Assembly (NCBI GenBank): GCA_964252035.1
Contig: CAXUOO010000113.1
Length of the DNA: 54,943 bases
Origin: Podarcis erhardii
Taxonomy: Eukaryota
Strand: one strand, 5' to 3'
Positions 13,507 to 54,943 of the stretch are shown here, one piece after another. The translations under genes and the position numbers were made by a program. The number at the start of each line of letters is the position of its first letter. The stretch's first letter is position 1. The notes below the pieces were generated by a model. It was given only the letters and a program-made list of their open reading frames with translations. It searched no databases and was not told where the DNA came from.

Positions 13507-13542
13507 TATACATATATATACAATATATATATATATATATAT
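13507..13542. repeat. (TA)n microsatellite
   Basis: Direct reading. Confidence 0.9.
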
Positions 13543-13547
13543 TTTGT

Positions 13548-15130: not shown

Positions 15131-17540
15131 GAAAATTGCTTGGGTGCTGACGCAGGAAAGAGAAACATTTTTCGATTGCTCATTCACAAACAATACTCAC
15201 AACTCCTTCCGTACAGGTGTTTAGGCAACACAAGAAAAAAGCAATGATATGGAGGAAAGCGGGTCGAATCAGGCAAAGGGCTAGCGATGCCTGCAAACGC
15301 TTTGAACAGTGTGTGTATAAAGGTAGACAACCAAAAGCAAGTACAGTGGAACAGACCTTTACCTGTTTCTAAGGTTGCATATATACATAAAAATATACAA
15401 ATGCACTCCAACTTTTAATCATCAAGATAATTATGCAAAATACTGATTTTTGCTTTCGTGGACTGCCAGTCGCCTTGAGGATTTTGGCGGGAACATGGCC
15501 TCTTCAGTTAAACCGAGTGCGTACACACAATAGAACAGGTCATGTTCCCATGTTGAGTGCCGTGTGTTACCGAATCTCGCGAATACCCAGCTGTGAGATG
15601 TAGCAGAAATTTTAGCTTGACATGCCCATGCTATCTGTTCAGCTTCGAGTTTGTGAGCGGCCAATCTGATTGTGAATTAGGAGTGCAATGCGAAAGGAGC
15701 AATTTAAAGAGCTGTATTGGAGATGTTTGATACCGGTGAATAAAATATCTGAAATATACTCAAACTACATGAAAGGGGTGGTATAAAAATTTAAGTGCCA
15801 CAACATGGAGCGAAAATCTGTGTAGCGCGGTCCTCAAGTGCCTCCCTGGCAAAAAATGTGAATTAAGGGGATCGTTGCACTTTTCCGGCGAATGTGAGAC
15901 ATTTGTCCTTAGCGCTGGTTTAGAATGCGTCTACCACTTCGGCTACAGCAGCGGCACCGACGACAGAGTGTAACGATTGAAGTGAAGCAGTTTTAGTTGC
16001 TAAAGCGACGATGTTTATCTAAAAAAGTTCTTTCTGGCAACAGGGCATCATTGGAACCACGGCCCATTTGCACATGCGTAAGCACGCAGAGCGTGCGCAT
16101 TTGCTGGAAAGTGTGCGTCAGCACGTTTTTTAAACTAAAGATCCTTACATATGTTTCAACAGGTTGTGCAAGTGGAAAGGCGATATGTATAAAAATTTGC
16201 TAATCTTGTGGCGTCCTGAAAATCGATTTTTTACCGCATTCATGCAACTCAGCGACAATCTCTGGTTCAAGTCATTTGTCCTGGTTCGTGCAGGTTGAAA
16301 GTAAGTGACTAGATGTGTGTAGCGCAACGCCTAGCACGAATAGGGACATATACTAGGCAGATAATATTCTGTATCGAACGAGCGGATACAATCAATTGAG
16401 AACTTAATCTATTGAACCCTGAACGAACAGCCTCTGCTACTGCGCAGATGAAGGGGAAAAAAGCAAGTTTGTAAGTATCGGCAGCGTGGCTCTCTCTAAC
16501 AGCGTGGGACATACCATAATGATAAGTAACTCAACAACCGGGACAGACCTGCTTATGGACCGCCACTTTCATGCAAGGAAAAATATTTGGATAGTAGATC
16601 AAACCTGCCCAGCTTGACAGATCTTCACTATATCGCTTTAGTAACCGCTGACCGCTTGAAACAGATTCTCTAAGTTCATAAGGAAAAAGTGTATACGCCT
16701 ACCGCTGCGTTCGGCATCTCCGTCTTGAACACGAGAGAGAGTTTTTGCCTTTATTTGAAAAAATCTACTATAGACTAAGGTCATGGGCAGTACTGTATGT
16801 AAAGCTCTGTGTATTACGGATCCAGAATGAACCGATAAAGCGCGATATGAAACAAACCTTTCTTAAATGCTGTAACCTATAGAAAGGTTAAAGTCTTTTC
16901 CCCATCAAAGACTAGTGGTTTGCATTGCGGCCGTGAGTGAATATTGGACTTCCTTCATGCATTCCATTACCGTACCTACCCTGCAGCTAGGGTCTAGCGT
17001 TCTTGCTGCAATTTTGATCATAAGCATGACGAGGAATGTTTCCATGTAATGCCTTTTTCATCAACGGTAAATTGATACTTCAACAATACTTCAAGCTTAA
17101 CATTCACGATAATGTTTTGTATTCACAGCTGTTGTTGTAAAGTTACGAAGGTCGTACCGTAAGTCAATCATAACGTCCAAGAAGAGGTAGGACAGCTATA
17201 TTATAGAAAACTGTGCTCCATTAAAAACAAAGAACATGTTCACTTTTGCTGCTACGTGCTCATAGCCGTTGTATTCAAGAATAATATTATAAATATTATG
17301 CTAGGCTCTCAGAACAGCAAATGAATTGTCTGAAATTTCGCTCAGCGTAGATTAGCATACACGTGCCACATTTTAGGAACACTGTATTGTAGTATATATG
17401 TCCACTTTAAATGATTGCTACATCTTCTTGCAGTAGAATCCGGTAGCACTTATGAAGTTGTATGAGTTCCTCACGCCTTGTGAGAAGAAACAATGTGGAA
17501 ACTGTTAATTAGCTTTTGAACTGAAGCTGCAGCGACGAAG

Positions 17541-24229: not shown

Positions 24230-27200
24230 TTTTGCAAGCCGGCGTTCAGTTTGACAGTTTAAGCAGCAAATTTGACTGTCAAACGAGTTGCCATGAGCAG
24301 ACAGAGGTGCTGCTGCAATCGGGTAGTTACAAGGGTTGCACAACAGCAATTTCAAACGTTTGCATTGTATAAAAGAATACGTTGTATTAGGTAGAGGCCA
24401 AACAATCGTGTAGCTGCGCATGGAGGTTACTCATCTCTACTCATTTGTGAGCGGACCTTTGAACTTAAATCAGCAGGTGAGCCGTGCAGCAGGGTCTCAA
24501 TAGTAAATATATCTGTGAAGTCATTACACAGCAGGAATTACTTCGCGTTACGAAGTAACTTTGAATCAAATTGTATACATCTTTATTACGATTATCCTGG
24601 TAAAGTTTGTATGCTAAAAAACATAGCGCTCAGGTACGGTTCAATATTTTTTTTAATCTCGCGTTACGTCCTCTTCAGGCTGCAAATCTGAATAATTTTT
24701 TAAAGGCTTGAGCCGTGCAGCATATTTTCGTTGTTTTTGGGTGTTTGTTAAGAAGCGCAAAACAATTTTTGAAGGCTCGTTCTAAACACCGAAAGGATTT
24801 TATGAGGTGAAAGCCGAAACTTTTTATTTATTTGTGCATGGTTCAATTTGTATGTCAGACTTCATTGTAGCGCTATGTAGAATGACATAGCACATTAGCC
24901 CCAAAGATCGCGAGGTCGAAGGCCCGCTACTATCAAGTAGTGAGAAGTGCACCAAGTTTCCGATGCTAGCGGTGTCTGTGTAGTCTCGTACAACAGCGAC
25001 TTTGAGACTGAGTAGATTGTATTACAAGAAAAAAAGCGGTGTATAATTCTTTGCATAACCTTTCTAATAGACTGTGTTTATCTGCCAGCAACTTGTTAGG
25101 CAGTAATATTATATCGTGTGGTGCATTATGTCCACTGCCTTGTTGAAGACATATCCAAGGTGACGAGCTGCGCCGGGTTTGATGTTTGCTGTATGTGTGA
25201 AGGATTGTGCAGCAGCACCTTAGTAAAGATTATTTTAAGTAAATAGAGTGCATTTATCAAAGCCAAATTTCTTCGTATTTTTGCTCGTTTTTCAGCAGAC
25301 TTCATTCAGTGCAGGTTTCAAAGTTGACGTTGGAAAAGTTTTAGATTTCTCAGAGCGCGTGCAGAGAGCGCTATTCAAGCTTTATTGAAACACTGTGATT
25401 CGTGCACCAGCAGAATTTATGAAAGATTGCACCGAAGCAACTTCAATGGCTCGCGTTGAGTAGGAGATAAATTTTGCTACACCGAACCCAGATGCTCAAC
25501 AACAGTGCGTGATCTGATCAGTTGCGTGTGGTTACAACCGAAGACAAAGCTATTATAAAGAATTATTTTTCTCCGAGCCGCAGCACCTCTATTGCAGGCC
25601 ATGAGGACTATTGTATACTTCAACGAAGTTAGCGGTGCAGTAAATTTCGGTTATCTGTGGACAGTTTCACAGCAACAACCGCAGAAGCTTGGGCTCAAAC
25701 ACATTAGTTAGTAGATCAAATAAGACAGCATATGGTATATCAAAAAGTGCATTATTTAAAAGGGTTTGGTTTTTTTTTTTTCGATCAGCATCAGAGCAAA
25801 GAGAAAGTATTTATCCATTTGGCTCGTTACTCGATCTGCGGGTTGTGCGGTCGATAGTAATCAGAGAGAGTACTTAATCATGGCTCGTTCTGCGGGCTGT
25901 GCGCTCGAATGTAAATTCTCAGAAAGTGAGACGCGCAACACATATATGGACACCCATGCACTCATGAAAGTTTACATAGCAGCAATTTCGACGGCTCAAA
26001 CTGTAAACTACACATTCTGCGTTACATGGAATCAATACGCTTTATATCATGCATTACTTGGCTAGTTGTCTTTTATCACAAGTGAAGACAACATCACAAT
26101 GCACTAAACGTACTGGTCAGTCAAGTTGCATTACCTTCATTTCAGGCTGCGCGGCCGAATTTGTTTATGTTAGGAAGATGAGCATGCAACATATTTTCAA
26201 GCAAAAAAGTGTCTGTGAAGGGTTTGCACAGCTGCCATTTTTACCTTTTTTGTTGTCAAATAGATGTACTGCTCTACATGGAAGTCGGAGTGCTATAGCA
26301 GCGCGTGTTGTGACTGCTTGGCTTGCTTACATATAGCTACAGCGGAAGGTATGAGTAATTATTCTCAATTTATCCCTCGCTTTTTGCAAGCCGCGCTTTT
26401 AAATCACTATTTCACGATAAGCCGCGCAACTAGTTTTCGGTGCCCGAATTAACTCTGAATGGTAGCACAGCAACAATTGTATAGGCTCGGGTCGAAAAGT
26501 CTGTTCCTTGTAGTTCAAAGACGACAGCCTTTGATAAATCAGTATGTTAATCAAATAGTATCGTTGGTTGATTTGAAGATTTTGCATTAGACTAGAGCTG
26601 CAAAACTTATTCTTACGGGGCGCTCTATGTACTGTGCGTTGTGCGGCCGGCCGTGTATTTTCAGAAAATAAGCCGCGAATTACATTTTGACCACCCCCAT
26701 ATCTGTGGAAGGTTGCACCGCAACAACCTCAAAGCGTCACATTGAAAAGTAACTACACTGCGGCACGGAAGTCGGATGCTGTACAACAGTGCATGATCTG
26801 GCTAATTGAATGTGGTTACAAGTGAACAGAGCACTAAGATAAAGTAGATATATTCTTTCCTTGCGCCGCAGCACGTCCATTGCAGGCTGTGCGGTCGAGT
26901 GTATAATTTTAAAATAAAAGGACGCGCAGCACATATTTGAACACCGCGTAATTAGCAGTTTCAAGGACTTGCAGACTACCTATCATTTGTTACATTGAAA
27001 GCATATCCTCTATAACCAGTGCTTAAATCGACAAATTGTATGACTTCACAGGTGACTGCAACATTAGAATATACTGAAAGTCTTTTTATGCAAGTCGCTG
27101 AATCTGTTTTTCTGACTGCGTCGTTGAACATATGTTTAAAGCAGATGATCGTCTTGCACATTTTCAAGCATCATAGTGTCTCATGAGGGTTGCACAGCAG

Positions 27201-29988
27201 CAGTTTTAGAGGACCGCATTGCGAAAAAATTGTGTTACATGAATGTCAGCTCTCTTGTGGCCCCGCGTATTTGTGTTCTGTTTATATATAATCACACCAT
27301 AAGATGGCAAGCATTTTTTTCCACGATGCAGTAGATCTGGTGAAGGCTGCGCCGTCGAGTGTATACTTTTACAAGGTGATTTTTGCAGCAGGTTTCGGCG
27401 CTCAGAGTAGAGGATAATGGTTGCACATCAACGAGTTTACTGGGTCGCGTGAATGCTGTTCGCCTGGTAGTTCATGGAAAAGTCCGTTCGATATATCGTT
27501 GAGTGTTTTATTTAGGAATGTGTGATTCTTTGCATGCACAAAATTGGGCTCAGGAAAAAGACACTTCCCTTACAGCGCGTTACGTGTAATGCAGGCTGTT
27601 CTCTCAATTGTATACAATCAGGAAGTGAGCCATGCTACCAGTTTTCGTTTTAAGAGGTAAATGTGAACGATTGCACAAAACCAAATTTTTATAGGCGCTT
27701 GTCAAAAAGTTTATTGCCAGTAGTTCAAAAAAGACAGCTTTAGATAAATCAATAGGTAGACCCTATAGTGTGTTGTTCTTGAAAGTTTTTTGCACTCGAC
27801 TAGAGAGGGAATATCTATATATCTTACGGTGCGTTACACATGATGTGGGCTGTGCTGTAGAATGTATATACTCAGAAAGAGATTCGCCAAGTATATTCTC
27901 GAATATCGCCCAGTGTATGGAAGGCTGAAAGCAGCAATTTCAAAACGGCACACGTTAAATTTATCTATTGTGTTACACGGCAGTATAAATTGCTGCAGCA
28001 AACCCGTTCTTGACTGCATGATTGTGCCCACATATCATAACAGCATAAATATAAAGTACAAAAATTTTCATTCAAAAGGGAATACATTTTTTGCATGCTG
28101 CCGTCGAGTGTATATGGTCAGGAGGTGAGCCGGTAGCAGGTCTTCGATGCTCAAAGTAGTTGTGAACGGTTGCACAAGGACAGTTGTACAGATGGTATTT
28201 CATGGAAAGTACCTTCTGATGTATTAGTATTGTTTCCAGTTAGAAATATCTCTATGTTTGCAAACAAAGCATCGAATACAGGGTGTAACCTCAAGGCACG
28301 TTACACGTAGTGCAGCTTGTACGGCCGAATGTGTACTTTTAGGAAATTAGCAGATAAGCTTTTTCTCGAACGTCGCCGTATCTACAGAGCGATGCGCAAC
28401 CTCAGTTTCAAATATCAGATTGTACACAAGGTACATGTGCAAATTGGATACCCGCGATGTACAGCAGTACGTGAATTGACGACAAGTGAATACAACGCAA
28501 GAAAAAACTGGGAGTAATCCTCATCGAGTGACAGTCCCTTGATTTTAGGCTGCGCGGACAAATGTAAATTTTTACCCGATATGCATACAGCACATTTTCG
28601 AGCCTCAAAGTAATTACAAGGGGTTGCACTCCAGAATTTTCAAACGCTCCCGTTGCAAACTAGATATACTGTGCTACACGGAAGTCTGAAGTGCTACTGC
28701 AGCACGTCGGTTGACTGCATGATCTTGCTTACATAATATCACATCGTAGAATCACGTTTTCATGGTGAGTACGTTTTTGCAGGCTGGTTTGTCGAGTGGT
28801 GAGCCGTGTTGTAAACGTGGGTGCTCGAAGTACTTGTGAACGGTTGCACAACGACAACTGTACAATCTCGCATTGAGCCCAACTTACCTGCTAGTTCCTG
28901 GAAGATAGAATCTGAATATTAGTATATATTTCATTCAAGAGTGTATCAATGTTTGCAAGCACAGCATCGTAAGAAGTGTGAATCCGTACGGCGCGTTGCA
29001 CGTGGTGCAGACTGTTCGGCGGAATGAGCAGATTCAGGAAGTGAGTCGAGAAGAAGATTCCCAAACCTCGCCTTATCTATTAAGGTTGCATCAGTTTCAA
29101 TGTGTCAGATGGCAAAGTAGATCTACTGTGCTATCTGGTTACCCGCGATATACAGCAGTACATGAATCGACAATTTGTATGTTTTTCCAAACTGAATTCA
29201 AGACAAGGAGACACTAGGTTTTCTTCTCATCATGTCTCAGTTCCTTCATTCAGGCTGCGCGGCAAAATGTATACTTTGAGCAGCTGATCAAGCAGCATTT
29301 TTTCCAAGTATTAATTGCACCAGGAGCTGCACGTCTGCGAATTCAGAGGCGCCCATTGCAAACTAAATATATGTGTTACACATGATTCTGAAGTGCTATC
29401 GCAGCGCGTGCGCTCTCTGTGTAAATTTCCCTGCACATTACCAAGGCATAAAAATAAAGAACGAGTAGATTCTTTAAGGATGCAATAAAATTTTCACAGG
29501 CTGCGCCGTCAAGTGTATGTACGTAGGAGGTGAGCCGTGCAGCAGATTCCCGGTGCTCGATGTATATGTGAACGGATGCACAGCAACAACTGTACGACCT
29601 CGCACTGAACGCTATAATCCTGCTGCTTCATGGATGCAAGCTGTGATTTATCAGTATCTGTTTCATTTGGGATGTATCTATGTTTGCATTCACAGTCATC
29701 AAAAAGTGTGTATTCTTGCGGCGCGTTCCAACTGCAGGTTGTGCGGTCGAATGTGTATTTTTTGGAAGTGAGCCGGGATGATCTTTTCGAACATTCTTCG
29801 TATCTACGAAGGGTTGCACAGCATCGATTGTCAAGTGCTACATTATAAAGTAGATATACTGTGCTACTTAAATACCTATAAACATCTACAGCACTTCATG
29901 TTTGGAAATATTGTGATATTCATAAGCGACGACAACACAAGCTTAAAGTAGGAGTATTTACTTTTCACTAAGCCGCGAAACTCTCATT
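24230..29988. repeat. Left diverged monomeric/trimeric layer of the satellite
   Basis: Monomer heads near 25890, 26143, 26386, 26635, 26883, 27112, 27345, 27593, 27848, 28094, 28313, 28546, 28780, 29015, 29250, 29497 and 29735. Degeneracy increases leftwards. Confidence 0.85.
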
Positions 29989-32407
29989 TCAGGCTGTGCA
30001 ACCAAATGTACATCCTGACCATATGACGTGCAGCACATTGTCGCGCACAACAGTATTTTTTTAGGGCTGCATAGCAGCACATTCAAACGCTTTGTTTTCA
30101 ACCTAGACACACGGTGATACACGAAGTTAAGAACTCTATAGCAGCGCATGCTTTGAGTGTCTGATTATGCTTACTCAGCACAGCATAGAAATGATGTACG
30201 AGTTTTTTGCCTTAAAGTAGGAAAAATACTTCTCAGAGGCTTCTTCGTGGGCTGTACATTTCCAGGACGTAAGCTTCGCAGCCAGTATTTGGTGCCGAAC
30301 CTGTTTGTGGAAGTTTGCACAGCAACAACTGTATAACCTAGATTGAATTCTATTTATCTTATATTACATGGAAAATAGCATTTTATACACGTGTATGTAA
30401 ATCACTCAAGCATGTATATGTGTTCGCAAAAAAGCAATTTACTATAAAAAAGTGTTTTTTGTACGGAGCGTCGAATATAGTGCAGGCTAGGCCATCGATT
30501 GTGTATATGATCAGAAAGGGAGCCACGCAAGAGGGTTTCTGTGTCTGAGGCATCTATGCACAAATGATCGGCAGTTTTACAGCCTCGGTATGAAAGCCTA
30601 TAGACATTGATGACAGCATTTGACACAGCAGAACGTGAACCTTTTGGTAGCGACTGTCTGTGTGTGTGAAATTGCAGCGTGAGATTTACGAGAAAGCGTT
30701 GATTTTCACGGTGCGTTACTAGTAGTGCGAGTTGTGCGGTCGAATGCGCTTTTTAGAAAGTGAATCAGAGGACAAAATCCGTATTCATGAAGAGCTGCAC
30801 AGCAGCATTTTCAAGGCTTCCCATTGCAATGTATTTGTAGTGTGCTACACGGAATTCAAACGTGTTATAGCAGCTCGCATTTGCTAATTGCTTGATTGTG
30901 CCCACGTATAATCACAGCTCAGCAATGAAGTACGAGTATGGTACTTTACAATAAATTTTGTTTTCTTTCAGGCTGCTGTATCGACTGTATACTTCTAGAA
31001 AGTGAGGTTTGCATCAATGTTTTGGTGCTCGAAGTATTTGTGAACGTTTTCACGTGAAAACTTGCATTGGCTTGCGCTGAACTCTGGCTATATGGTAATG
31101 GAAGATCGCTTCAGTATAACAGTATATGTTTCATTCAAAACTGTATTTACGTTTGCAAGCATAGCATCAAAAGAATTGTGTATCGGTATGGCGCGCTTTA
31201 CGTAGATCAGACTGTATGTTCAAATGAGTATATTCAGGAAGTGAGCCGAGAAGCATATCTTCGTACGTCGCCGTATATACGGAGGGTTGCACAGCATCAG
31301 CTTCAAGTGTCAGATTGTAAACAACATATGCTGTGCTACTTGGTAACCAGCAACATACAGCATTACATGGTTTGGAATATTTTATGTTTGCAGAGTTGAA
31401 TAAAGTACAAAGAGGAACTAAGAGTGCTTCTCATCAGGCTGGATCACTTTCGTTTCATGGTGTGCGACAAAATATATGTTTTGAACGGATAAGCGTGCAG
31501 CAATTTCCAATTTTTTAAGTGTTTGTATGGGGATGCACTTCAGCAATTTCAACCGCTCCCATTGCAAATTAGGACTATTGTGTCGTGCGCAAGTCAGAGA
31601 CGTACAGCAGCGCGTGCTTCAGCTGCGTGGCTGAAGTTACATATTTTCACATTATAAGGTTGAAACTCACGATGCAATACGTGTTTTGCAGGCTGCTCCA
31701 TCGAGTGTACAATCTGTAGAAGCAAGCTTTGTAGCAGGGTTTCGGCTGTGGATGTATCGTTGATCAGACGCACCGTAACAATGGTGTAGGCTCCCTTCAA
31801 TCACTGTCCTTCTGATGGTTCCTGGAGGAGACGGCACCTAATATATCAACTTTTGTTTCAAACATGTATTTGTATGTGGTTGCATCAAAACAAATGTGTA
31901 TTCTTACGGTGCGGTACACGTAGTGCAAAGCGTAGGTTCGGATGTATATGTCCAGCACAAGCATATTTTTGATTTTATTTATGAAAGATTGGACAGCAAT
32001 CTCGAAGTGTCACATTGCAAAGTAGATATACTGTGCCATGTGGATGTCAGATGATAAAAAAACAGAGTCTGCTTTGAGTACTCGAATATGTGTACAAGTG
32101 AACCCATACTAGAATGTAGTAGAAGTGACTTTTCTCACGCCGCAGCAGCTTCATTGCAGACTGTGCGATCCAGTGTGTATTCTCAGAACGTGAGCCACGC
32201 AACACGTCCTTGACATCGTCGTACTTATGGAAGGTTGCACAGCAGGAGTCTCAAGAGATTGCCTCGCATAGTAGATTTACTGCGTCACATACAATCCATA
32301 TGCACTAGAGCAGTGCATGAATCAACTAGTTGTCTGTTTTGATCAAAAAATACACACCACTATAACAAACTAAGACGAAGGCTCTTTCAAGTGGCATTAC
32401 TTTCATT
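29989..32407. repeat. Older, diverged copy of the 10-monomer HOR unit
   Basis: Colinear with the HOR unit monomer by monomer (e.g. 30483 corresponds to 32905, 31925 to 34328). Clearly more diverged than the core copies; identity rises near 32290-32350. Confidence 0.85.
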
Positions 32408-35400
32408 CAGGCTGCGTTTTTGATTGTATATTTTGAGCGAATGATAGTCTAGCACGTTTTCGAGCGTCACAGTCTCAGAGGAGAGTTGTCCAGCAGTAAT
32501 TTTAGACGCGCAAACTAGATGTATCGTGCTATGCGAATGTCAGAAGTGCTATAGCAGCGCTTGCTCTGACTGCCTGGTTGTGCTAACGTATATCCATACC
32601 ATGAGAATGAGCTGCCAGTTTTTCTTTCTCAAATGCAATATGTCTTTTGCATGCTGCGCCGTCGGCCTATATTCTAAAGCATTGAGCCGTGCATAGCAGA
32701 TTTTCGGTGCACGAATTCTCTGTGAACGCTTACAAAGCAACAACTGTGTAAGCACTGCTGCAAACTATGTATCTGATATTCCGTCGAAAGTACCTATTTA
32801 TATACAAGTACGTAGATGATTCAAGAATGTCTACGTGTTTGCAAACACAGAAGTTTACTTACAAAAAGTGTTTTTCGTACGGGAAGAGGTCGTCAAATAA
32901 ACTGCAGGCTGTGTGTCATCGAATCTGTATATGACCAGGAAGTGAGCCATGCAGCGGGGTTTCCCTGTTCAAGAAATTTATGAACGGATGCACAACAGCA
33001 GTTGTAGAGCCTTGGGATGAAAATTATATAGCTCATAGTCATTGATGACAGCACTTGATATAGCAGAACGCTAATCGCATAGTAGTGAGTGTCTGTGTGT
33101 GTTTGAAACTGCAGCGTGAGATTAGAGAAAACGCGTGGATTTTCATGGCGCGTTACTAATAATGGGAGTAGTGCGGCCGAATGCACAGTTTTGGAAAGGG
33201 GTTCAGAAAACCAAAGCCGTATTTATGAAGGTCTGCAAGGCAGCATTTTCAAGGCGTCCCATTGCAATATAGGTAGAGTGTGTTCCACGGGATTCAAGCG
33301 TGTTACAGCAGCGCGCGTTTGCTGATTGCTTGATTGTGCCCACGTGTAAACACAGCTCAATAATGAAGTACGAGTATTGTTCTTTACAATGAACTTCGTA
33401 TACTCTCAGGCTGCTTTATCGAATGTATACTGCTAAAAATGAGCCTTGCATCAAAGTTTCGGTGCTTGAAGTATTTGTAAACATTTGCAGGGGAATTCTT
33501 GCCTTGGCGTGCATTGAACTCTGGTTATCTGATAGTTCATATAAATAGCATCTGGTGTATCAGTATATGAATCATACAAAACTGTATTTACGTTTGCAAG
33601 CATAGCATTGAAAGAATTGTGTACCGGTATGGAGCGCTAAATGTAAATCAAACTGGACGGTCGCGTATCTTTGTACGTCGCATATATACGGAGGGTTGCG
33701 CAGCATTAGCTTCAAGTATCAGATTGTAAACAACATATGCTGTGCTATTTGAGTACCAGCAATATACAGCTTATACGGTTAGACAAGTTGTATGTTTTGA
33801 ATGAAACAGTAGGAAAAGCTGAAAGTGCTTCTCATCAGACTGGATTACATTCATCTCGGGCTGCGGGACCAAATGCATATTCCTAACAGAAATGAATGAA
33901 GAAAATTTTGAGTTTCAACATGTTTTCACGGGATGCACTTCAGAAATTTCAGACGCTCTTTTCGCAAGCTAGGTCTACTTTTCTCATAGGTATTAGAACA
34001 GCGCATGCTTAGTTCTGCATCTCGGAGGTTACACATCCGAACAGCGTGAGAATGAAACGTACGATGAAATACGATATTTTTCAGGCTGTTCCGTGGAGTG
34101 TACATTCGCAGGAAGCCAGCCTTGGAGCATGGTGTCGTTCGTCGATGTATTTTCGATTGGCTGTATAGCAACAATTGTATAGGCTCGCTTTGAGCACTGT
34201 TTATCTGGTAGCTCATGGAGGGGATGGCATCGTATATATTACTACTTGTTTCATCTAAAATTGTATATGTTTCTGCAAGCAAAACATCAAAAAGAGCGTG
34301 TACTCTTACGGTGCCTTATGCGTAGTGGAAAGTGTGCGATCGGATGAGTAAATCCAGCACAAGCATATGTTTGATTATAATTGTGGAAGATTGAACAGCA
34401 ATCTCGAAGTGTCACATTGCAAAGAAGTTAACTGTGTCACCTGGATGTCAGATGCTTGAACAAAGTGCCTGTTTTGACTAACTGAATATGCTTACAAGTG
34501 AACCGGGTACTAAGGTGTAAAGCAGAAGTAGTTTTCTTCACGTCGCAGCATGTTCATTGCAGACTCTGCGATCCATTGTGTATTCTCAGGACGTGAGCTG
34601 CTCAGCACGTCTGTGACTCCGCGGTACTTGAGAAAGTTGCACAGCAGGAGTTTCAAGGGTTGCCTTGCATAGTAGATATACTGAGTTACATACAAGCCAT
34701 ACGCATTAGAGCAGTGCATGAATCAACTAATTGTCTCTTTTGATTAAGAAATACACACCACTATAACAAACTAAGACGAAGGCTCTTTCAAGTGGCATTA
34801 CTTTCATTCAGGCTGCGTTTTTGATTGTATATTTTGTGCAAATGATAGTCTAGCACGTTTTCGAGCTTCACAGTCTCAGAGGAGAGTTGTCCAGCAGTAA
34901 TTGTAGACGCGCAAACTAGATGTATCGTGCTATGCGAATGTCAGAAGTGCTATAGCAGCGCTTGCTCTGACTGCCTGGTTGTGCTAACGTATATCCATAC
35001 CATGAGAATGAGCTGCCAGTTTTTCTTTCGCAAATGCAATATGTCTTTTGCATGCTGCGCCGTCGGCCTATATTCTAAAGCATTGAGCCGTGCATAGCAG
35101 ATTTTCGGTGCACGAATTCTCTGTGAACGCTTACAAAGCAACAACTGTGTAAGCACTGCTGCAAACTATGTATCTGGTATTCCGTGGAAGGTACCACCTT
35201 ATATACAAGTACGTAGATCATTCAAGAATGTCTACGTGTTTGCAAACACAGAAGTTTACTAACAAAAAAGTGTTTTTCGAACGGGAAGAGGGCGTCAACT
35301 AAGCTGCAGGCTGTGTGCCGTCGAATCTGTCTATGACCAGCAAGTGAGCCATGCAGCGGGGTTTCCCTGTTCAAGAAATTTATGAACGGATGCACAACAG

Positions 35401-38400
35401 CAGTTGTAGAGCCTTGGGATGAAAACTATATAGCTTATAGTCATTGATGACAGCACTTGATATAGCAGAACGCTAATCGCTTAGTAGTGAGTGTCTGTGT
35501 GTGGTTGAAATTGCAGCGTGAGATTAGAGAGAACGCGTGGATTTTCATGGCGCGTTACTAATAATGGGAGTTGTGCGGCCGAATGCACAGTTTAGAAAGG
35601 GGTTCAGAAAACCAAAGCCGTATTTATGAAGGTCTGCAAAGCAGCATTTTCAAGGCGTCCCATTGCAATATAGGTAGAGTGCGTTCCACGGATTCAAGCG
35701 TGTTACAGCAGCGCGCGTCTGCTGATTGCTTGATTGTGCCCACGTGTAATCACAGCTCAATAATGAAGTACGAGTATTGTTCTTTACAATGAACTTCGTA
35801 TACTCTCAGGCTGCTTTATCGAATGTATACTGCTAGAAAATGAGCCTTGCATCAAAGTTTCGGTGCTTGAAGTATTTGTAAACATTTGCAGGAGAATTCT
35901 TGCATTGGCGTGCATTGAACTCTGGTTATCTGATAGTTCATATAAATAGCATCTGGTGTATCAGTATATGAATCATACAAAACTGTATTTACGTTTGCAA
36001 GCATAGCATTGAAAGAATTGTGTACCGGTATGGAGCGCTAAATGTAAATCAAACTGGACGGTCGCGTATCTTTGTACGTCGCATATATACGGAGGGTTGC
36101 GCAGGCATTAGCTTCAAGTATCAGATTGTAAACAACATATGCTGTGCTATTTGAGTACCAGCAATATACAGCTTATACGGTTAGACAAGTTGTATGTTTT
36201 GAATGAAACAGTAGGAAAAGCTGAAAGTGCTTCTCATCAGACTGGATTACATTCATCTCGGGCTGCGGGACCAAATGCATATTCCTAACAGAAATGAATG
36301 AAGAAAATTTTTAAGTTTCAACATGTTTGCACGGAATGCAGTTCAGAAATTTCAGACGCTCTTTTCGCAAGCTAGGTCTACTTTTCTCAAAGGTATTAGA
36401 GCAGCGCATGCTTAGTTCTGCATCTCGGAGGTTACACATCCGAACAGCGTGAGAATGAAACGTACGATGAAATACGATATTTTGCAGGCTGTTCCGTGGA
36501 GTGTACATTCGCAGGAAGCCAGCCTTGGAGCATGGTGTCGTTCGTCGATGTATTTTCGATTGGCTGTATAGCAACAATTGTATAGGCTCGCTTTGAGCAC
36601 TGTTTATCTGGTAGCTCATGGAGGGGATGGCATCGTATATATTACTACTTGTTTCATCTAAAATTGTATATGTTTCTGCAAGCAAAACATCAAAAAGAGC
36701 GTGTACTCTTACGGCGCCTTATGCGTAGTGGAAAGTGTGCGATCGGATGAGTAAATCCAGCACAAGCATATGTTTGATTATAATTGTGGAAGATTGAACA
36801 GCAATCTCGAAGTGTCACATTGCAAAGAAGTTAACTGTGTCACCTGGATGTCAGATGCTTGAACAAAGTGCCTGTTTTGACTAATTGAATATGCTTACAA
36901 GTGAACCGGGTACTAAGGTGTAAAAGCAGAAGTAGTTTTCTTCACGTCGCAGCATGTTCATTGCAGACTCTGCGATCCATTGTGTATTCTCAGGACGTGA
37001 GCTGCTCAGCACGTCTGTGACTCCGCGGTACTTGAGAAAGTTGCACAGCAGGAGTTTCAAGGGTTGCCTTGCATAGTAGATATACTGAGTTACATACAAG
37101 CCATACGCATTAGAGCAGTGCATGAATCAACTAATTGTCTCTTTTGATTAAGAAATACACACCACTATAACAAACTAAGACGAAGGCTCTTTCAAGTGGC
37201 ATTACTTTCATTCAGGCTGCGTTTTTGATTGTATATTTTGTGCGAATGATAGTCTAGCACGTTTTCGAGCTTCACAGTCTCAGAGGAGAGTTGTCCAGCA
37301 GTAATTGTAGACGCGCAAACTAGATGTATCGAGCTATGCGAATGTCAGAAGTACTAAAGCAGCGCTTGCTCTGACTGCCTGGTTGTGCTAACGTATATCC
37401 ATACCATGAGAATGAGCTGCCAGTTTTTCTTTCGCAAATGCAATATGTCTTTTGCATGCTGCGCCGTCGGCCTATATTCTAAAGCATTGAGCCGTGCATA
37501 GCAGATTTTCGGTGCACGAATTCTCTGTGAACGCTTACAAAGCAACAACTGTGTAAGCACTGCTGCAAACTATGTATCTGGTATTCCGTGGAAGGTACCA
37601 CTTTATATACAAGTACGTAGATGATTCAAGAATGTCTACGTGTTTGCAAACACAGAAGTTTACTAACAAAAAAGTGTTTTTCGAACGGGAAGAGGTCGTC
37701 AACTAAGCTGCAGGCTGTGTGTCATCGAATCTGTCTATGATCAGCAAGTGAGCCATGCAGCGGGGTTTCCCTGTTCAAGAATTTATGAACGGATGCACAA
37801 CAGCAGTTGTAGAGCCTTGGGATGAAAACTATATAGCTTATAGTCATTGATGACAGCACTTGATATAGCAGAACGCTAATCGTTTAGTAGTGAGTGTCTG
37901 TGTGTGTTTGAAATTGCAGCATGAGATTAGAGAGAACGCGTGGATTTTTCATGGCGCGTTACTAATAATGGGAGTTGTGCGGCCGAATGCACAGTTTTAG
38001 AAAGGGGTTCAGAAAACCAAAGCCGTATTTATGAAGGTCTGCAAGGCAGCATTTTCAAGGCGTCCCATTGCAATATAGGTAGAGTGCGTTCCACGGGATT
38101 CAAGCGTGTTACAGCAGCGCGCGTCTGCTGATTGCTTGATTGTGCCCACGTGTAATCACAGCTCAATAATGAAGTACGAGTATTGTTCTTTACAATGAAC
38201 TTCGTATACTCTCAGGCTGCTTTATCAAATGTATACTGCTAAAAAATGAGCCTTGCATCAAAGTTTCGGTGCTTGAAGTATTTGTAAACATTTGCAGGGG
38301 AATTCTTGCATTGGCGTGCATTGAACTCTGGTTATCTGATAGTTCATATAAATAGCATCTGGTGTATCAGTATATGAATCATACAAAACTGTATTTACGT

Positions 38401-47400: not shown

Positions 47401-50400
47401 AGTTGTAGAGCCTTGGGATGAAAATTATATAGCTTATAGTCATTGATGACAGCACTTGATATAGCAGAACGCTAATCGCTTAGTAGTGAGTGTCTGTGTG
47501 TGTTTGAAATTGCAGCGTGAGATTAGAGAGAACGCGTGGATTTTCATGGCGCGTTACTAATAATGGGAGTTGTGCGGCCGAATGCACAGTTTTAGAAAGG
47601 GTTCAGAAAATCAAAGCCGTATTTATGAAGGTCTGCAAGGCAGCATTTTCAAGGCGTCCCATTGCAATATAGGTAGAGTGCGTTCCACGGGATTCAAGCG
47701 TGTTACAGCAGCGCGCGTCTGCTGATTGCTTGATTGTGCCCACGTGTAATCACAGCTCAATAATGAAGTACGAGTATTGTTCTTTACAATGAACTTCGTA
47801 TACTCTCAGGCTGCTTTATCGAATGTATACTGCTAGAAAATGAGCCTTGCATCAAAGTTTCGGTGCTTGAAGTATTTGTAAACATTTGCAGGGGAATTCT
47901 TGCATTGGCGTGCATTGAACTCTGGTTATCTGATAGTTCATATAAATAGCATCTGGTGTATCAGTATATGAATCATACAAAACTGTATTTACGTTTGCAA
48001 GCATAGCATTGAAAGAATTGTGTACCGGTATGGAGCGCTAAATGTAAATCAAACTGGACGGTCGCGTATCTTTGTACGTCGCATATATACGGAGGGTTGC
48101 GCAGCATTAGCTTCAAGTATCAGATTGTAAACAACATATGCTGTGCTATTTGAGTACCAGCAATATACAGCTTATACGGTTAGACAAGTTGTATGTTTTG
48201 AATGAAACAGTAGGAAAAGCTGAAAGACTGGATTACATTCATCTCGGGCTGCGGGACCAAATGCATATTCCTAACAGAAATGAATGAAGAAAATTTTTAA
48301 GTTTCAACATGTTTGCACGGAATGCAGTTCAGAACTTTCAGACGCTCTTTTCGCAAGCTAGGTCTACTTTTCTCAAAGGTATTAGAGCAGCGCATGCTTA
48401 GTTCTGCATCTCGGAGGTTACACATCCGAACAGCGTGAGAATGAAACGTACGATGAAATACGATATTTTGCAGGCTGTTCCGTGGAGTGTACATTCGCAG
48501 GAAGCCAGCCTTGGAGCATGGTGTCGTTCGTCGATGTATTTTCGATTGGCTGTATAGCAACAATTGTATAGGCTCGCTTTGAGCACTGTTTATCTGGTAG
48601 CTCATGGAGGGGATGGCATCGTATATATTACTACTTGTTTCATCTAAAATTGTATATGTTTCTGCAAGCAAAACATCAAAAAGAGCGTGTACTCTTACGG
48701 CGCCTTATGCGTAGTGGAAAGTGTGCGATCGGATGAGTAAATCCAGCTCAAGCATATGTTTGATTATAATTGTGGAAGATTGAACAGCAATCTCGAAGTG
48801 TCACATTGCAAAGAAGTTAACTGTGTCACCTGGATGTCAGATGCTTGAACAAAGTGCCTGTTTTGACTAATTGAATATGCTTACAAGTGAACCGGGTACT
48901 AAGGTGTAAAGCAGAAGTAGTTTTCTTCACGTCGCAGCATGTTCATTGCAGACTCTGCGATCCATTGTGTATTCTCAGGACGTGAGCTGCTCAGCACGTC
49001 TGTGACTCCGCGGTACTTAAGAAAGGTTGCACAGCAGGAGTTTCAAGGGTTGCCTTGCATAGTAGATATACTGAGTTACATACAAGCCATACGCATTAGA
49101 GCAGTGCATGAATCAACTAATTGTATCTTTTGATTAAGAAATACACACCACTATAACAAACTAAGACGAAGGCTCTTTCAAGTGGCATTACTTTCATTCA
49201 GGCTGCGTTTTTGATTGTATATTTTGTGCAAATGATAGTCTAGCACGTTTTCGAGCTTCACAGTCTCAGAGGAGAGTTGTCCAGCAGTAATTGTAGACGC
49301 GCAAACTAGATGTATCGAGCTATGCGAATGTCAGAAGTACTAAAGCAGCGCTTGCTCTGACTGCCTGGTTGTGCTAACATATATCCATACCATGAGAATG
49401 AGCTGCCAGTTTTTCTTTCGCAAATGCAATATGTCTTTTGCATGCTGCGCCGTCGGCCTATATTCTAAAGCATTGAGCCGTGCATAGCAGATTTTCGGTG
49501 CACGAATTCTCTGTGAACGCTTACAAAGCAACAACTGTGTAAGCACTGCTGCAAACTATGTATCTGGTATTCCGTGGAAAGTACCTATTTATATACAAGT
49601 ACGTAGATGATTCAAGAATGTCTACGCGTTTGCAAACACAGAAGTTTACTTACAAAAAAGTGTTTTTCGTACGGGAAGAGGTCGTCAAATAAACTGCAGG
49701 CTGTGTGCCGTCGAATCTGTCTATGACCAGGAAGTGAGCCATGCAGCGGGGTTTCCCTGTTCAAGAAATTTATGAACGGATGCACAACAGCAGTTGTAGA
49801 GCCTTGGGATGAAAACTATATAGCTCATAGTCATTGATGACAGCACTTGATATAGCAGAACGCTAATCGTTTAGTAGTGAGTGTCTGGGTGTGTTTGAAA
49901 CTGCAGCGTGAGATTAGTGAAAACGCGTGGATTTTCATGGCGCGTTACTAGTAATGGGAGTTGTGCGGTCGAATGCACAGTTTTAGAAAGGGGGTTCAGA
50001 AAACCAAAGCCGTATTTATGAAGGTCTGCAAAGCAGCATTTCCCAGGCGTCCCATTGCAATATAGGTATAATGTGTTCCACGGGATTCAAGCGTGTTACA
50101 GCAGCGCGCGTCTGCTGATTGCTTGATTGTGCCCACGTGTAATCACAGCTCAATAATGAAGTACGAGTATTGTTCTTTACGATGAACTTCGTATACTCTC
50201 AGGCTGCTTTATCGAACGTATACTGTAAAAAATTCAGCCTTGCATCAGCGTTTCGGTGCTTGAAGTATTTGTGAACATTTGCAGGGGAATTCTTGCATTG
50301 GCGTGCGTTGAACTCTGGTTATCTGATAGTTCATATAAACTAGCATCTGATATATCAGTATATGAATCATACAAAACTGTATTTTCGTTTGCAAGCATAG

Positions 50401-53130
50401 CATTGAAAGAATTGTGTACCGGTATGGAGCGCTAAATGTGAATCAAACTGGACGGTCGCGTATCTTTGTACGTCGCATATATACGGAGGGTTGCGCAGCA
50501 TTAGCTTCAAGTATCAGATTGTAAACAACATATGCTGAGCTATTTGAGTACCAGCAATATACAGCTTATACGGTTAGACAAGTTGTATGTTTTGAATGAA
50601 ACAGTAGGAAAAGCTGAAAGTGCTTCTCATCAGACTGGATTACATTCATCTCGGGCTGCGGGACCAAATGCATATTCCTAACAGAAATGAATGAAGAAAA
50701 TTTTTAAGTTTCAACATGTTTGCACGGTATGCAGTTCAGAAATTTCAGACGCTCTTTTCGCAAGCTAGGTCTACTTTTCTCAAAGGTATTAGAGCAGCGC
50801 ATGCTTAGTTCTGCATCTCGGAGGTTACACATCCGAACAGCGTGAGAATGAAACGTACGATGAAATACGATATTTTTCAGGCTGTTCCGTGGAGTGTACA
50901 TTCGCAGGAAGCCAGCCTTGGAGCATGGTGTCCGTTCGCCGATGTATTTTCGATTGGCTGTATAGCAACAATTGTATAGGCTCGCTTTGAGCACTGTTTA
51001 TCTGGTAGCTCATGGAGGGGATGGCATCGTATATATTACTACTTGTTTCATCTAAAATTGTATATGTTTCTGCAAGCAAAACATCAAAAAGAGCGTGTAC
51101 TCTTACGGCGCCTTATGCGTAGTGGAAAGTGTGCGATCGGACGAGTAAATCCAGCACAAGCATATGTTTGATTATAATTGTGGAAGATTGAACAGCAATC
51201 TCGAAGTGTCACATTGCAAAGAAGTTAACTGTGTCACCTGGATGTCAGATGCTTGAACAAAGTGCCTGTTTTGACTAATTGAATATGCTTACAAGTGAAC
51301 CGGGTACTAAGGTGTAAAGCAGAAGTAGTTTTCTTCACGTCGCAGCATGTTCATTGCAGACTCTGCGATCCATTGTGTATTCTCAGGACGTGAGCTGCTC
51401 AGCACGTCTGTGACTCCGCGGTACTTAAGAAAGGTTGCACAGCAGGAGTTTCAAGGGTTGCCTTGCATAGTAGATATACTGAGTTACATACAAGCCATAC
51501 GCATTAGAGCAGTGCATGAATCAACTAATTGTCTCTTTTGATTAAGAAATACACACCACTATAACAAACTAAGACGAAGGCTCTTTCAAGTGGCATTACT
51601 TTCATTCAGGCTGCGTTTTTGATTGTATATTTTGTGCGAATGATAGTCTAGCACGTTTTCGAGCTTCACAGTCTCAGAGGAGAGTTGTCCAGCAGTAATT
51701 TTAGACGCGCAAACTAGATGTATCGTGCTATGCGAATGTCAGAAGTGCTATAGCAGCGCTTGCTCTGACTGCCTGGTTGTGCTAACGTATATCCATACCA
51801 TGAGAATGAGCTGCCAGTTTTTCTTTCGCAAATGCAATATGTCTTTTGCATGCTGCGCCGTCGGCCTATATTCTAAAGCATTGAGCCGTGCATAGCAGAT
51901 TTTCGGTGCACGAATTCTCTGTGAACGCTTACAAAGCAACAACTGTGTAAGCACTGCTGCAAACTATGTATCTGGTATTCCGTGGAAAGTACCTATTTAT
52001 ATACAAGTACGTAGATGATTCAAGAATGTCTACGTGTTTGCAAACACAGAAGTTTACTTACAAAAAGTGTTTTTCGTACGGGAAGAGGTCGTCAAATAAA
52101 CTGCAGGCTGTGTGCCGTCGAATCTGTCTATGACCAGGAAGTGAGCCATGCAGCGGGGTTTCCCTGTTCAAGAAATTTATGAACGGATGCACAACAGCAG
52201 TTGTAGAGCCTTGGGACGAAAACTATATAGCTTATAGTCATTGATGACAGCACTTGATATAGCAGAACGCTAATCGCATAGTAGTGAGTGTCTGTGTGTG
52301 TTTGAAATTGCAGCATGAGATTAGAGAGAACGCGTGGATTTTCATGGCGCGTTACTAATAATGGGAGTTGTGCGGTCGAATGCACAGTTTTAGAAAGGGG
52401 GTTCAGAAAACCAAAGCCGTATTTATGAAGGTCTGCAAAGCAGCATTTCCCAGGCGTCCCATTGCAATATAGGTATAATGTGTTCCACGGGATTCAAGCG
52501 TGTTACAGCAGCGCGCGTCTGCTGATTGCTTGATTGTGCCCACGTGTAATCACAGCTCAATAATAAAGTACGAGTATTGTTCTTTACGATGAACTTCGTA
52601 TACTCTCAGGCTGCTTTATCGAACGTATACTGTAAACAATTCAGCCTTGCATCAAAGTTTCGGTGCTTGAAGTATTTGTAAACATTTGCAGGGGAATTCT
52701 TGCATTGGCGTGCATTGAACTCTGGTTATCTGATAGTTCATATAAATAGCATCTGGTGTATCAGTATATGAATCATACAAAACTGTATTTAAGTTTGCAA
52801 GCATAGCATTAAAGGAATTGTGTACCGGTATGGAGCGCTAAATGTAAATCAAACTGGACGGTCGCGTATCTTTGTACGTCACGTATATACGGAGGGTTGC
52901 GCAGCATTAGCTTCAAGTATCAGATTGTAAACAACATATGCTGTGCTATTTGAATACCAGCAATATACAGCTTATATGGTTAGATAAGTTGTATGTTTTG
53001 AATGAAACAGTAGGAGAAACTAGGATTGCTTCTCATCAGGCTGGATTACATTCATCTTGGGCTGCGCGACCAAATGCAATTTCTAACAGAAATGAATGAA
53101 GAAAATTTTTGAGTTTCAACATGTTTGCAC
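32408..53130. repeat. Homogeneous ~2.4-kb higher-order repeat: 8 complete copies plus 1 partial
   Basis: Unit starts (CAGGCTGCGTTTTTGATTG) at 32408, 34809, 37213, 39616, 42023, 44420, 46809, 49199 and 51607, giving unit lengths 2401, 2404, 2403, 2407, 2397, 2389, 2390 and 2408. The ORF track independently shows the same 68-aa ORF nine times at this spacing. Confidence 0.98.
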
Positions 53131-54943
53131 GGGCTGCACTTAAGCAATTTTTGACGCTCGCATTGCAAGTCCACTGTATTACATGGATATCAGAGGTGCT
53201 ATAGCAGCGTGTGCTTCGACTGCGCGACTGTGCTTACAAAATCATCACAGCATAAGATTGAAATAAGAGTATTTTTTCAACAATGCAATACGTCGTTGCA
53301 CACTGGTCTATCGGATTTATACTTTCGGAACGCAAGCGTTGCAGCAGGGGCTCGGTGCTTAAAGTGTCTGTGAAGGTTGCACAGCAAAAATGGTACTGAC
53401 TCGCGTTGAACACTTTTTTTCGTGTAGTTCATGGTTGCTAGCATGCGTATATGCTTCATTCAGGCGTGTATGTTTGCAAGCACAGCGTCAAAATAAATGT
53501 GTATTTTGTAAGGCGCGTTACACGTGCAGGCTGTGCGGTCGAATGTGTATTTCCAGAAAGTTAATTAAGAATTTTTTTTCGATCATCGCCGTGTTTATGG
53601 CGGGTTGCACAGCATCAATTTTTTTTTTCAAGCGTCACATTTTAAAGTAGATATGTTGTGCTATTTGGATACCTAAGAAATTCTACAGCAGTACATGGTT
53701 TGGATTATTATAAATATTTCATAGGCGACGACAACACAAGCATAAACTAAGATTCCTTTCCTTTAAACTGCCACACTTTCATTTCTCATTAAGCTGAGGT
53801 ACTTTCATATCAGGCTGCGCAGCCAAATGCATATTCTGATCATATGACGTACAGCATATTTTCGAGCCCCAAAGTGTCTGCAAGGAATTGCAGACCAGCA
53901 ATATCCGAGGCTCCCATTGCAAACCAGATACATTGTGCTACGCTGAAGTCAGAGGTGCTATAACAGCTGAATAGGCTTGCGTTGAGCACTTCTCATCTGG
54001 TAGTTCGTGGAGAGGATGGCAACTGATGTAGGAAATATTTGTCTTAGCCAACAATGTATACGTGTTTGCAAGCAAAGCATCAAAAAATGTGTACGCTTAC
54101 GGCGCAATACATGTAGTGCAGGCTGTGCGATCGAATGTGGAACATTAGCATATGAGGCTTGAAGAATATTTTCGAACGTCGACGCATCTATTCGTGTTGT
54201 ACAAATGAAAATGCTACGCTGCAAAGTAGATACACTGTGCTACTTGGAAATCCACGTTATACAGCAGTACATGAATTGACAAATCATATGTTTTCAAAGT
54301 AAGTACAATACAAACATAAATTAGGAGCACTTCTCATCAAGCCGTATCATTTTCATTTCAGGCTGGGCGAATAAATGTGTAGTTTGAGCAAATGAGCATT
54401 CAGCAGCTCTTCAAGCCCTAACGTGTTTGCATGGGGTGGCACAGCCGCAGTTGTAGAACGCTTCCCGTGAAAGCTAGGTATATTGTGCTATATGAAAGTC
54501 ACAGCCGCTATAGCAGCGTGTGGTTTGCCTACGTGACTGTGCTTACATATTGTCACAGCATAAAATAAAGTACGAGTTTTTTTTCAACGATGCGATGCGC
54601 TTTTTGCAAGTTGGTTATTTTAGTTCAAGTTCTCAAGAGGTGAGCCGTGCACCGGGTTTTTAATGCTTGACGTATCTTAACATGACCGGCTGCATAGCAA
54701 AAATTGCACTGGCTCGCGTTGAGCACTATGTACTTGGTAGTTCATGGATGCTAGCATCTGACTTATTGATATGTGTTTGGTTCAGGAGTGTGTATGATAG
54801 CAAGCACAGCATCAAGAAAGTGGTGTATCCGTACGGCGCGTTACACGGAGCAAGCTGTGCAGTCGAATGCGAATATTCAGAAAGTGAGCCATGAAGCATG
54901 TTTTCGAACACCGCCGTCTTTGTGGAAGGTTTCACAACAGCAA
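53131..54943. repeat. Right diverged layer of the satellite (XYZ trimers)
   Basis: HOR identity is lost inside monomer 7 of copy 9. Heads continue near 53290 (Y), 53528 (Z), 53812 (X/Y chimera), 54119 (Z), 54358 (X), 54606 (Y) and 54850. Confidence 0.85.

What the first reader, a model, noticed from the sequence alone, without database searches (positions are those of the whole stretch)
25890..54943. Constant head plus three interchangeable tail classes with an ordered X-Y-Z grammar
Tails fall into three classes: X (CCCATTGCAAA..TAGAT..GTGCTACACGGAAGTC..AAGTGCTATAGCAGCGC), Y (ACAACTGTA..CTCGCATTGAGC..TCTGGTAGTTCATGG..TTTGCAAGCACAGCATCAAAA..ACGGCGCGTTACACGTAGTG) and Z (GTAGATATACTGTGCTACTTGGATACC..TACAGCAGTACATGAAT..CTTCTCATCA). 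Plain XYZ trimers (~720-730 bp) occur at 28546-29988 and in the right flank. The decamer reads X Y Y X Y Z X Y X' Z. This gives three nested periods (~240, ~725, ~2400 bp). Inference: the shared head acts as the recombination/register point that lets tails be reshuffled, like a cassette array.
Basis: partly seen in the sequence, partly recalled or inferred. Interest (0 to 1): 0.7.

Follow-up and report, generated by a model that had tools for sequence, protein, structure and literature searches.

The report
Nested satellite DNA repeat, probably from a parasite
This is ordinary non-coding satellite DNA, most likely from a single-celled parasite assembled with a lizard: one old ~245-base unit split into three main subtypes that sit in a fixed order, and a ten-unit block of them was recently copied about nine times.

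Summary
The repeat is real. About 128 head-to-tail ~245-bp monomers run from ~24261 to the window end. Eight full 2.4-kb decamer copies (32410-51608) are 97-99% identical, and a ninth is cut at ~53135. Older monomers flank them.

Three details need correcting:
- **The head is not constant.** It is about 70% identical between classes, with two conserved boxes (columns 1-25 and 75-97). It carries class identity almost as well as the tail.
- **The tails are homologous.** They are diverged copies of one ancestral tail, not unrelated cassettes.
- **X' sits with Z, and Y has a subclade.**

Only one head/tail swap lineage exists (Z head on X tail, decamer position 4). All three breakpoints I could resolve touch box 2. 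So conserved segments do look like preferred exchange points, which is already described for other satellites.

Best reading: an old XYZ trimer unit was remodelled by unequal crossing-over into a decamer that was recently amplified. CpG is not depleted and the flanking RNA-polymerase exon is not vertebrate-like, so this is not lizard DNA. The scan had already noted similar satellites on other pieces of this assembly (s1-229644, s1-241318).

It is a new member of a known kind, of low to moderate interest.

The parts
24261..25894 (+). Decayed left edge of the satellite array (monomers L00-L06); classes barely recognisable
   Evidence: Weak nhmmer hits from 24327 onward; low blastn scores to all classes
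26145..28547 (+). Oldest recognisable decamer-pattern block (L08-L17), in rotated register: X Y2 W Z' X Y Y2 ZX Y Z
   Evidence: Class calls; 55% identity to the decamer rotated to start at position 7, against 25-31% for wrong registers
28548..29991 (+). Two plain X-Y-Z trimers (about 722 bp each)
   Evidence: Class calls; the two trimers are 61% identical
29992..32409 (+). Older, diverged copy of the decamer (L24-L33). Identity to the young copies rises from about 55% on the left to about 96% on the right
   Evidence: Position-by-position best blastn partners for H02-H10; 72% overall identity; sliding identity
32410..51608 (+). Eight full copies of the 2.4-kb decamer higher-order repeat (2389-2408 bp each)
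   Evidence: 97.2-99.1% pairwise identity; 12-mer spacing peak at 2380-2409
51609..53135 (+). Partial ninth decamer copy: positions 1-6 plus about the first 75 nt of position 7. Sharp end of the homogenised block
   Evidence: Identity falls from above 90% to about 58% between 53106 and 53136; base-level alignment
53136..54943 (+). Right flank of older monomers in trimer order, running off the window end
   Evidence: Class calls
53813..54120 (+). 308-bp fusion monomer: X columns 1 to ~157 joined out of register to Y column ~97 onward
   Evidence: Diagnostic-site alignment to the X and Y consensuses; equal blastn scores to an X and a Y monomer
35569..35808 (+). Example of the hybrid monomer at decamer position 4 (Z-like head, X-like tail). 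Older versions lie at 30730-30970 and 27848-28093
   Evidence: Z:X diagnostic sites are 15:6, 15:4 and 21:5 in the head, and 8:27, 10:34 and 10:28 in the tail; placed away from X in the head tree and inside X in the tail tree
28548..28572 (+). Example of conserved box 1 (monomer columns 1-25)
   Evidence: Highest between-class identity, 76-84% among X, Y, Z and Z' (56-76% for pairs with W); information profile
28621..28643 (+). Example of conserved box 2 (columns ~75-97), where the three resolved breakpoints fall
   Evidence: 72-88% between-class identity among X, Y, Z and Z' (60-68% for pairs with W); breakpoints

Best explanation
This is non-coding satellite DNA of a non-vertebrate eukaryote, most likely the coccidian parasite co-assembled with the wall lizard.

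One ancestral ~245-bp monomer diverged into whole-monomer subfamilies X, Y and Z. These were fixed in the order X-Y-Z as an old ~725-bp higher-order unit.

Unequal crossing-over then remodelled a run of trimers into a ten-monomer unit, X Y Y2 ZX Y Z X Y W Z'. The events included a duplication of Y, an in-register Z/X exchange at conserved box 2, and the appearance of W. That decamer existed long ago: copies at about 55% and about 72% identity survive in the left flank. It was recently re-amplified to about 8.6 copies at 97-99% identity.

The 'grammar' is inherited order, not active shuffling. The 'head' is simply the slower-diverging third of the monomer. Because it is the most similar part between subfamilies, it is where exchanges between them resolve.

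Shown: the anatomy, the classes, tail homology, head/tail congruence and the breakpoint positions. Inferred: the order of events, unequal crossing-over as the mechanism, and the host organism.
For: - Monomer segmentation and uniform orientation.
- Decamer copies are 97-99% identical, while their monomers are only about 50-65% alike.
- Classes are recovered without supervision.
- Class consensuses align end to end. Tails are 58-65% identical with z = 5.5-10.4.
- Within-class identity is flat along the monomer at 0.52-0.63.
- Head and tail trees are both nearly perfectly sorted by class.
- Lag-3, lag-6, lag-9 and lag-10 periodicities are present.
- Diverged decamer copies lie in the left flank.
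- There is one hybrid lineage and one fusion monomer, both with mapped breakpoints.
- No ORF above 124 aa in the decamer, no tRNA, no Rfam family, no inverted repeat and no excess folding energy.
- CpG observed/expected is 0.88-0.97 across the whole window, including 24 kb of unique DNA.
- The flanking RNA-polymerase largest-subunit exon gives only weak, equal-ranking matches to solved yeast, archaeal and human subunits, and none is vertebrate-close.
Against: - The order of rearrangement events cannot be reconstructed uniquely from one locus.
- Only three breakpoints are resolvable, and the boxes were defined after looking at the data.
- The W type is not a clean hybrid, and its origin is open.
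- The coccidian assignment rests on earlier unchecked notes for other contigs. Here I showed only that the contig is not vertebrate-like.
- Variants among the young copies are no rarer in the head than in the tail (4.8% against 4.2% of sites, p = 0.48). So nothing shows present-day constraint on the boxes, and the reason for their long-term conservation stays open.
Confidence: 0.8

Rival explanations
1. Cassette array. A constant head serves as a dedicated recombination or register site that lets three interchangeable tails be reshuffled.
For: All three resolvable breakpoints touch conserved box 2 at the head/tail border. One monomer lineage really does carry the head of one class on the tail of another.
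Against: - Tails are homologous across classes.
- Heads sort by class almost as well as tails, with 5 against 3 label changes and about 23 for shuffles.
- The single swap is old and inherited at one decamer slot.
- X is followed by Y in 13 of 13 cases, which is conserved order rather than shuffling.
- There is no coding capacity.
Confidence: 0.07
2. Functional (centromeric or heterochromatin-organising) satellite whose two conserved boxes are kept by selection as protein-binding sites. Breakpoints cluster there because a bound protein promotes breakage or exchange. This is compatible with the main reading for the array's history.
For: Two boxes stay 72-88% identical between the X, Y and Z-type subfamilies, which are otherwise 32-80% alike in 25-column windows. 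The layout of a young homogeneous core with older flanks resembles centromeric arrays. Conserved motifs at satellite junctions have been proposed as rearrangement promoters in nematodes (PMC3694981).
Against: - No CENP-B-box core motif occurs anywhere in the window.
- Recent variants are not depleted in the head.
- No dyad symmetry or folding signal is present.
- Chromosomal position is unknown.
- In Toxoplasma, the comparable heterogeneous 240-350-bp arrays are reported as subtelomeric (PMC9498087, PMC4008256).
Confidence: 0.15
3. Satellite of the lizard host rather than of a parasite.
For: According to earlier notes of this scan, the assembly is that of a wall lizard.
Against: CpG observed/expected is 0.88-0.97 throughout, including the unique 24 kb. 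From general knowledge, vertebrate bulk DNA is strongly CpG-depleted. The RNA-polymerase exon has no close match to human RPA1, RPB1 or RPC1. No telomere-type TTAGGG runs are present.
Confidence: 0.03

Closest known systems
Primate alpha-satellite higher-order repeats built from ordered monomer types (from my own knowledge; reviews PMC9859433 and PMC8122249 were listed but not read)
   Same: Tandem monomers of roughly nucleosome scale. Monomer subfamilies sit in fixed order. Multimeric units are nearly identical to each other while their monomers are far apart. A young homogeneous core is flanked by older diverged monomers. Hybrid monomers arise from in-register exchange.
   Different: The monomer is ~245 bp rather than 171 bp, and the sequence is unrelated. 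There is no CENP-B-box core. The host is a non-vertebrate. Chromosomal position is unknown. Monomer divergence is much deeper (about 50-65%).
Meloidogyne satellite arrays with conserved motifs at monomer junctions (PMC3694981, abstract read)
   Same: Highly diverged monomers (32-64% identity) share short conserved motifs. These motifs are found at junctions and are proposed to promote rearrangement. Simple and higher-order arrays coexist.
   Different: In the nematodes, different satellite families are joined and monomers shuffle often between array forms. Here the monomers are subfamilies of one family, and head and tail stay linked.
Toxoplasma gondii subtelomeric satellites: Sat350/Sat680, sat240 and TgTARE2/3 (PMC9498087, PMC4008256, PMC2877743)
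   Same: [quoted passage not shown] They are non-coding and lie next to gene-poor DNA. In Toxoplasma they are heterochromatic and yield small RNAs.
   Different: Sequence relationship was not tested, because no Toxoplasma sequence was available to the tools. No telomere repeats occur in this window. A homogenised 2.4-kb decamer is not mentioned in the passages I read.

Membership tests
Satellite DNA with higher-order repeat organisation | Head-to-tail monomers in one orientation over tens of kilobases | tested here: met
   128 monomers, all on the + strand, from 24261 to 54943
Satellite DNA with higher-order repeat organisation | Multimer copies far more alike than the monomers within a multimer | tested here: met
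   Decamer copies are 97.2-99.1% identical. Monomer classes are 49-73% identical at consensus level
Satellite DNA with higher-order repeat organisation | Non-coding, with no structured-RNA or tRNA origin detectable | tested here: met
   Longest ORF in a decamer is 124 aa and monomer lengths are not in frame. No Rfam match, no tRNA, folding z-score -0.38
Centromeric satellite | Association with centromeric histone, or position at the primary constriction | not testable with these tools
   No chromatin or cytological data are available
Centromeric satellite | CENP-B-box-like core motif (a feature of some, not all, centromeric satellites) | tested here: not met
   0 matches to the core pattern in the window
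Toxoplasma-type subtelomeric satellites (Sat350 / sat240) | Sequence homology to those families | not tested
   No reference sequence was reachable by the tools. Only descriptions were read
Toxoplasma-type subtelomeric satellites (Sat350 / sat240) | Position next to telomere repeats | tested here: inconclusive
   Only three isolated TTTAGGG heptamers and no runs. The array runs off the window end
Recombination cassette array (conserved box plus interchangeable variable cassettes) | Variable parts are alternative, non-homologous or coding cassettes | tested here: not met
   Tails of all classes align significantly. No ORFs
Recombination cassette array (conserved box plus interchangeable variable cassettes) | Constant part assorts independently of the variable part | tested here: not met
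   The head tree is sorted by tail class: 5 changes against a shuffled mean of 23. Segment-wise class calls are concordant except for one lineage

The most novel reading that the evidence does not exclude
Box 2 (about 23 bp at the head/tail border) is a true exchange hotspot, for instance the binding site of a DNA-binding or transposase-derived protein. Under this reading it drives the remodelling of a centromere-like higher-order satellite in a coccidian. That would be notable because, as I recall and did not check here, the model coccidian Toxoplasma has been reported to have non-satellite centromeres.
Probability: 0.1. Interest if true: 0.55.

Novelty: new member of a known kind. Interest (0 to 1): 0.25.

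Why it matters
The finding adds a cleanly resolved example of nested higher-order satellite structure (monomer, trimer, decamer) from what is probably an apicomplexan parasite. Satellite architecture is little described in that group. It gives three mapped exchange points at one conserved box, which could be tested genome-wide. It does not reveal a new kind of element or mechanism. On the practical side, it flags this contig as non-host DNA inside a lizard assembly.

Tried and rejected
- **Tandem Repeats Finder:** returned nothing at score 100 or above. The monomers are too diverged and the 2.4-kb period exceeds its limit. I used k-mer spacing and nhmmer instead.
- **First pairwise identities:** the free-end-gap scoring was unstable and close to shuffled values, so I discarded it in favour of blastn scores and a MAFFT alignment.
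- **Internal sub-repeat within the monomer:** head-against-tail local alignment was not above shuffles.
- **Structured RNA or cruciform idea:** no Rfam match, DNA folding z-score -0.38, no inverted repeats.
- **tRNA or SINE origin:** no tRNA-like sequence.
- **Bacterial promoter and terminator scan:** at chance level.
- **CENP-B-box core:** absent.
- **Taxon of the flanking RNA-polymerase exon:** the atlas search gave only generic polymerase-fragment clusters. The word-based protein search gave no hit in the allowed length range, which says nothing about full-length relatives.
- **The scan's own notes by sequence:** blank.
- **Literature on wall-lizard assemblies and coccidia:** nothing relevant found.
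- **Not tried:**
  - I did not run the large representative protein search, because the polymerase family was not in doubt and only its taxon was.
  - I did not scan the public DNA collections for the satellite, because short conserved boxes would give mostly chance matches and long ones only the same species.
Full report
**What is there**

Spacing of repeated 12-mers shows one dominant period of 2380-2409 bp. It is confined to about 32-53 kb. An iterated nhmmer profile seeded with one monomer finds 128 consecutive hits, all on the + strand. They are spaced 185-308 bp apart, mostly 213-258 bp, from about 24261 to the window end.

Tandem Repeats Finder reports nothing, because neighbouring monomers are too diverged and the long period exceeds its limit.

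**The decamer**

Cutting at every tenth monomer gives eight full copies (32410-51608, 2389-2408 bp each). These are 97.2-99.1% identical to each other. A ninth copy stays above 90% identical up to about 53106-53135 and then drops to about 58%.

Two adjacent copies (44422-46810 and 46811-49200) share a 13-bp deletion in position 6 and are the most similar pair at 99.1%. This points to local duplication inside the array.

**Classes**

I took 52 non-redundant monomers: all flank monomers plus one decamer copy. All-against-all blastn with average-linkage clustering gives three main clusters, plus a few decayed monomers at the left edge.

ML trees add more detail:
- Y contains a well-supported subclade Y2: decamer position 3, its older copy, and three left-flank monomers.
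- Z contains a Z' group (position 10).

In this notation the decamer reads X Y Y2 ZX Y Z X Y W Z'.

**Nested periods**

The third period is real. Mean blastn score between monomers is 36-45 bits at lag 3, against 14-19 at lags 1 and 2. Further peaks occur at lags 6, 9 and 10.
- 28548-29991 is X Y Z X Y Z.
- The right flank is X Y Z, an X/Y fusion, Z, then X Y Z.
- 29992-32409 is an older decamer copy. It is 72% identical overall and matches position by position for H02-H10, rising from about 55% on its left to about 96% on its right.
- 26145-28547 shows the same ten-slot pattern in rotated register at 55% identity. Wrong registers give 25-31%.

The decamer arrangement is therefore old, and only its latest amplification is recent.

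**Is the head constant and are the tails interchangeable?**

No, on both counts.
- **Tails are homologous.** Class consensuses align over their whole length. Between-class identity is 67-73% in columns 1-100. In the tail it is 59-68% for X-Z, 53-60% for X-Y and 42-47% for Y-Z. Global alignment of the tails alone beats all 500 shuffles, with z = 10.4, 6.4 and 5.5.
- **Only two short boxes stand out.** Columns 1-25 and about 75-97 are the conserved segments.
- **The classes are whole-monomer lineages.** Within-class identity is flat along the monomer at 0.52-0.63, so the head/tail contrast comes only from between-class divergence.
- **The head carries class identity.** A head-only ML tree needs 5 changes of class label and a tail-only tree needs 3. 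Three is the minimum for four labels, and shuffled labels need 23 on average and never fewer than 18.

**Breakpoints**

Segment-wise classification and diagnostic-site alignments reveal two kinds of mosaic monomer.

*Hybrid at position 4.* Decamer position 4 and its two older counterparts (30730-30970 and 27848-28093) have a Z-like head and an X-like tail. Z:X diagnostic sites are 15:6, 15:4 and 21:5 in the first 101 alignment columns. They are 8:27, 10:34 and 10:28 afterwards. The switch lies between columns ~77 and ~91, inside box 2. Because all three occupy the same slot, I count them as one old event.

*Fusion monomer.* The 308-bp monomer at 53813-54120 is X up to column ~157, then Y from column ~97 onward. 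This is an out-of-register fusion whose Y side abuts box 2.

*Edge of the homogenised block.* The sharp right edge of the block lies at column ~75-80 of an X monomer.

Three of three resolvable breakpoints therefore touch a 23-bp box in a ~245-bp unit. Under a uniform model this would happen roughly 2 times in 1000 by my own arithmetic. But the sample is three events and the box was defined after looking, so this is only suggestive.

The other class-order changes (Y to Y2, the W insertion, the trimer/decamer joints) fall at monomer borders. That is in or near box 1, where class signal is too weak to place them more finely.

**Function tests**

- No ORF above 124 aa lies in a decamer, and monomer lengths are not in frame.
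- There is no Rfam family, no tRNA and no inverted repeat. DNA folding energy is no better than shuffles, z = -0.38.
- The CENP-B-box core is absent.
- The 107 substitution sites that vary among the eight young copies are spread evenly: 4.8% of head sites against 4.2% of tail sites, p = 0.48. Nothing shows present-day constraint on the head, though the power of this test is low.

**Whose DNA**

Earlier notes of this scan say the assembly is a wall lizard's and also holds contigs of a coccidian parasite. They mention a decayed 246-bp satellite and a nested kilobase satellite on other pieces. I did not verify the coccidian label for this contig. Two results here do argue against lizard DNA:
- CpG observed/expected is 0.88-0.97 in every part of the window, including 24 kb of unique sequence.
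- The only recognisable gene piece is the first exon of an RNA-polymerase largest subunit at 1929-2393 on the minus strand (Pfam PF04997). It matches solved yeast, archaeal and human subunits only weakly (E-values 1e-11 to 1e-5) and about equally, with no close vertebrate match.

**How it most likely works**

One ancestral monomer diverged into subfamilies that were fixed in X-Y-Z order. Unequal crossing-over between misaligned monomers produced a Y duplication, a Z/X hybrid and the W slot. These exchanges resolved in the most similar segments, and together they gave a decamer. The decamer has been amplified more than once, most recently into the present 97-99% identical block. The anatomy is shown directly. 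The mechanism and the order of events are inferred.

**Comparison with known systems**

- **Primate alpha satellite.** From my own knowledge, the layout mirrors the ordered monomer types inside higher-order units there, with a young core and older flanks.
- **Root-knot nematode satellites.** The idea that short conserved motifs mark satellite junctions and promote rearrangement has been published (PMC3694981).
- **Toxoplasma.** Heterogeneous subtelomeric arrays of 240-350 bp units (Sat350/680, sat240, TgTARE2/3) are known. They are heterochromatic and yield small RNAs (PMC9498087, PMC4008256, PMC2877743). Homology to these was not testable here.

**Verdict**

The element is a new member of a well-known kind.

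Noticed in passing
window 1929-2393 (-), and probably 2-328 (-): First exon of an RNA-polymerase largest-subunit gene (Pfam PF04997), with a GGLYD...CPGH zinc-loop motif that looks Pol I-like from memory. A likely second exon with a Cys-rich motif lies about 1.6 kb downstream. No close match to any solved vertebrate subunit.
   Followed up: partly
window 1-54943: CpG observed/expected is 0.88-0.97 everywhere, so the contig is not CpG-depleted and is unlikely to be lizard nuclear DNA.
   Followed up: yes
window ~13540-15200 (+): A purine-rich (A/G) tract of about 1.7 kb with strong GC and AT skew (0.24 and 0.21 in the 14-16 kb bin). It is either low-complexity coding sequence or a non-coding polypurine region. 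Not analysed.
   Followed up: no
window 5133, 6489, 6903, 7222, 7584, 12879, 13523: Several (AT)n microsatellites of 14-24 bp are scattered through the unique flank. No telomere-type repeat runs occur anywhere.
   Followed up: no
window 44422-49200: Two adjacent decamer copies share a 13-bp deletion in monomer position 6 and are the most similar pair (99.1%). This suggests a recent local duplication of a copy within the array.
   Followed up: partly
window 29992-32409 versus 53106-53136: The homogenised block has a graded left border, with identity climbing from about 55% to about 96% over 2.4 kb. Its right border is sharp, falling from above 90% to about 58% within about 30 bp. The asymmetry is unexplained.
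   Followed up: partly
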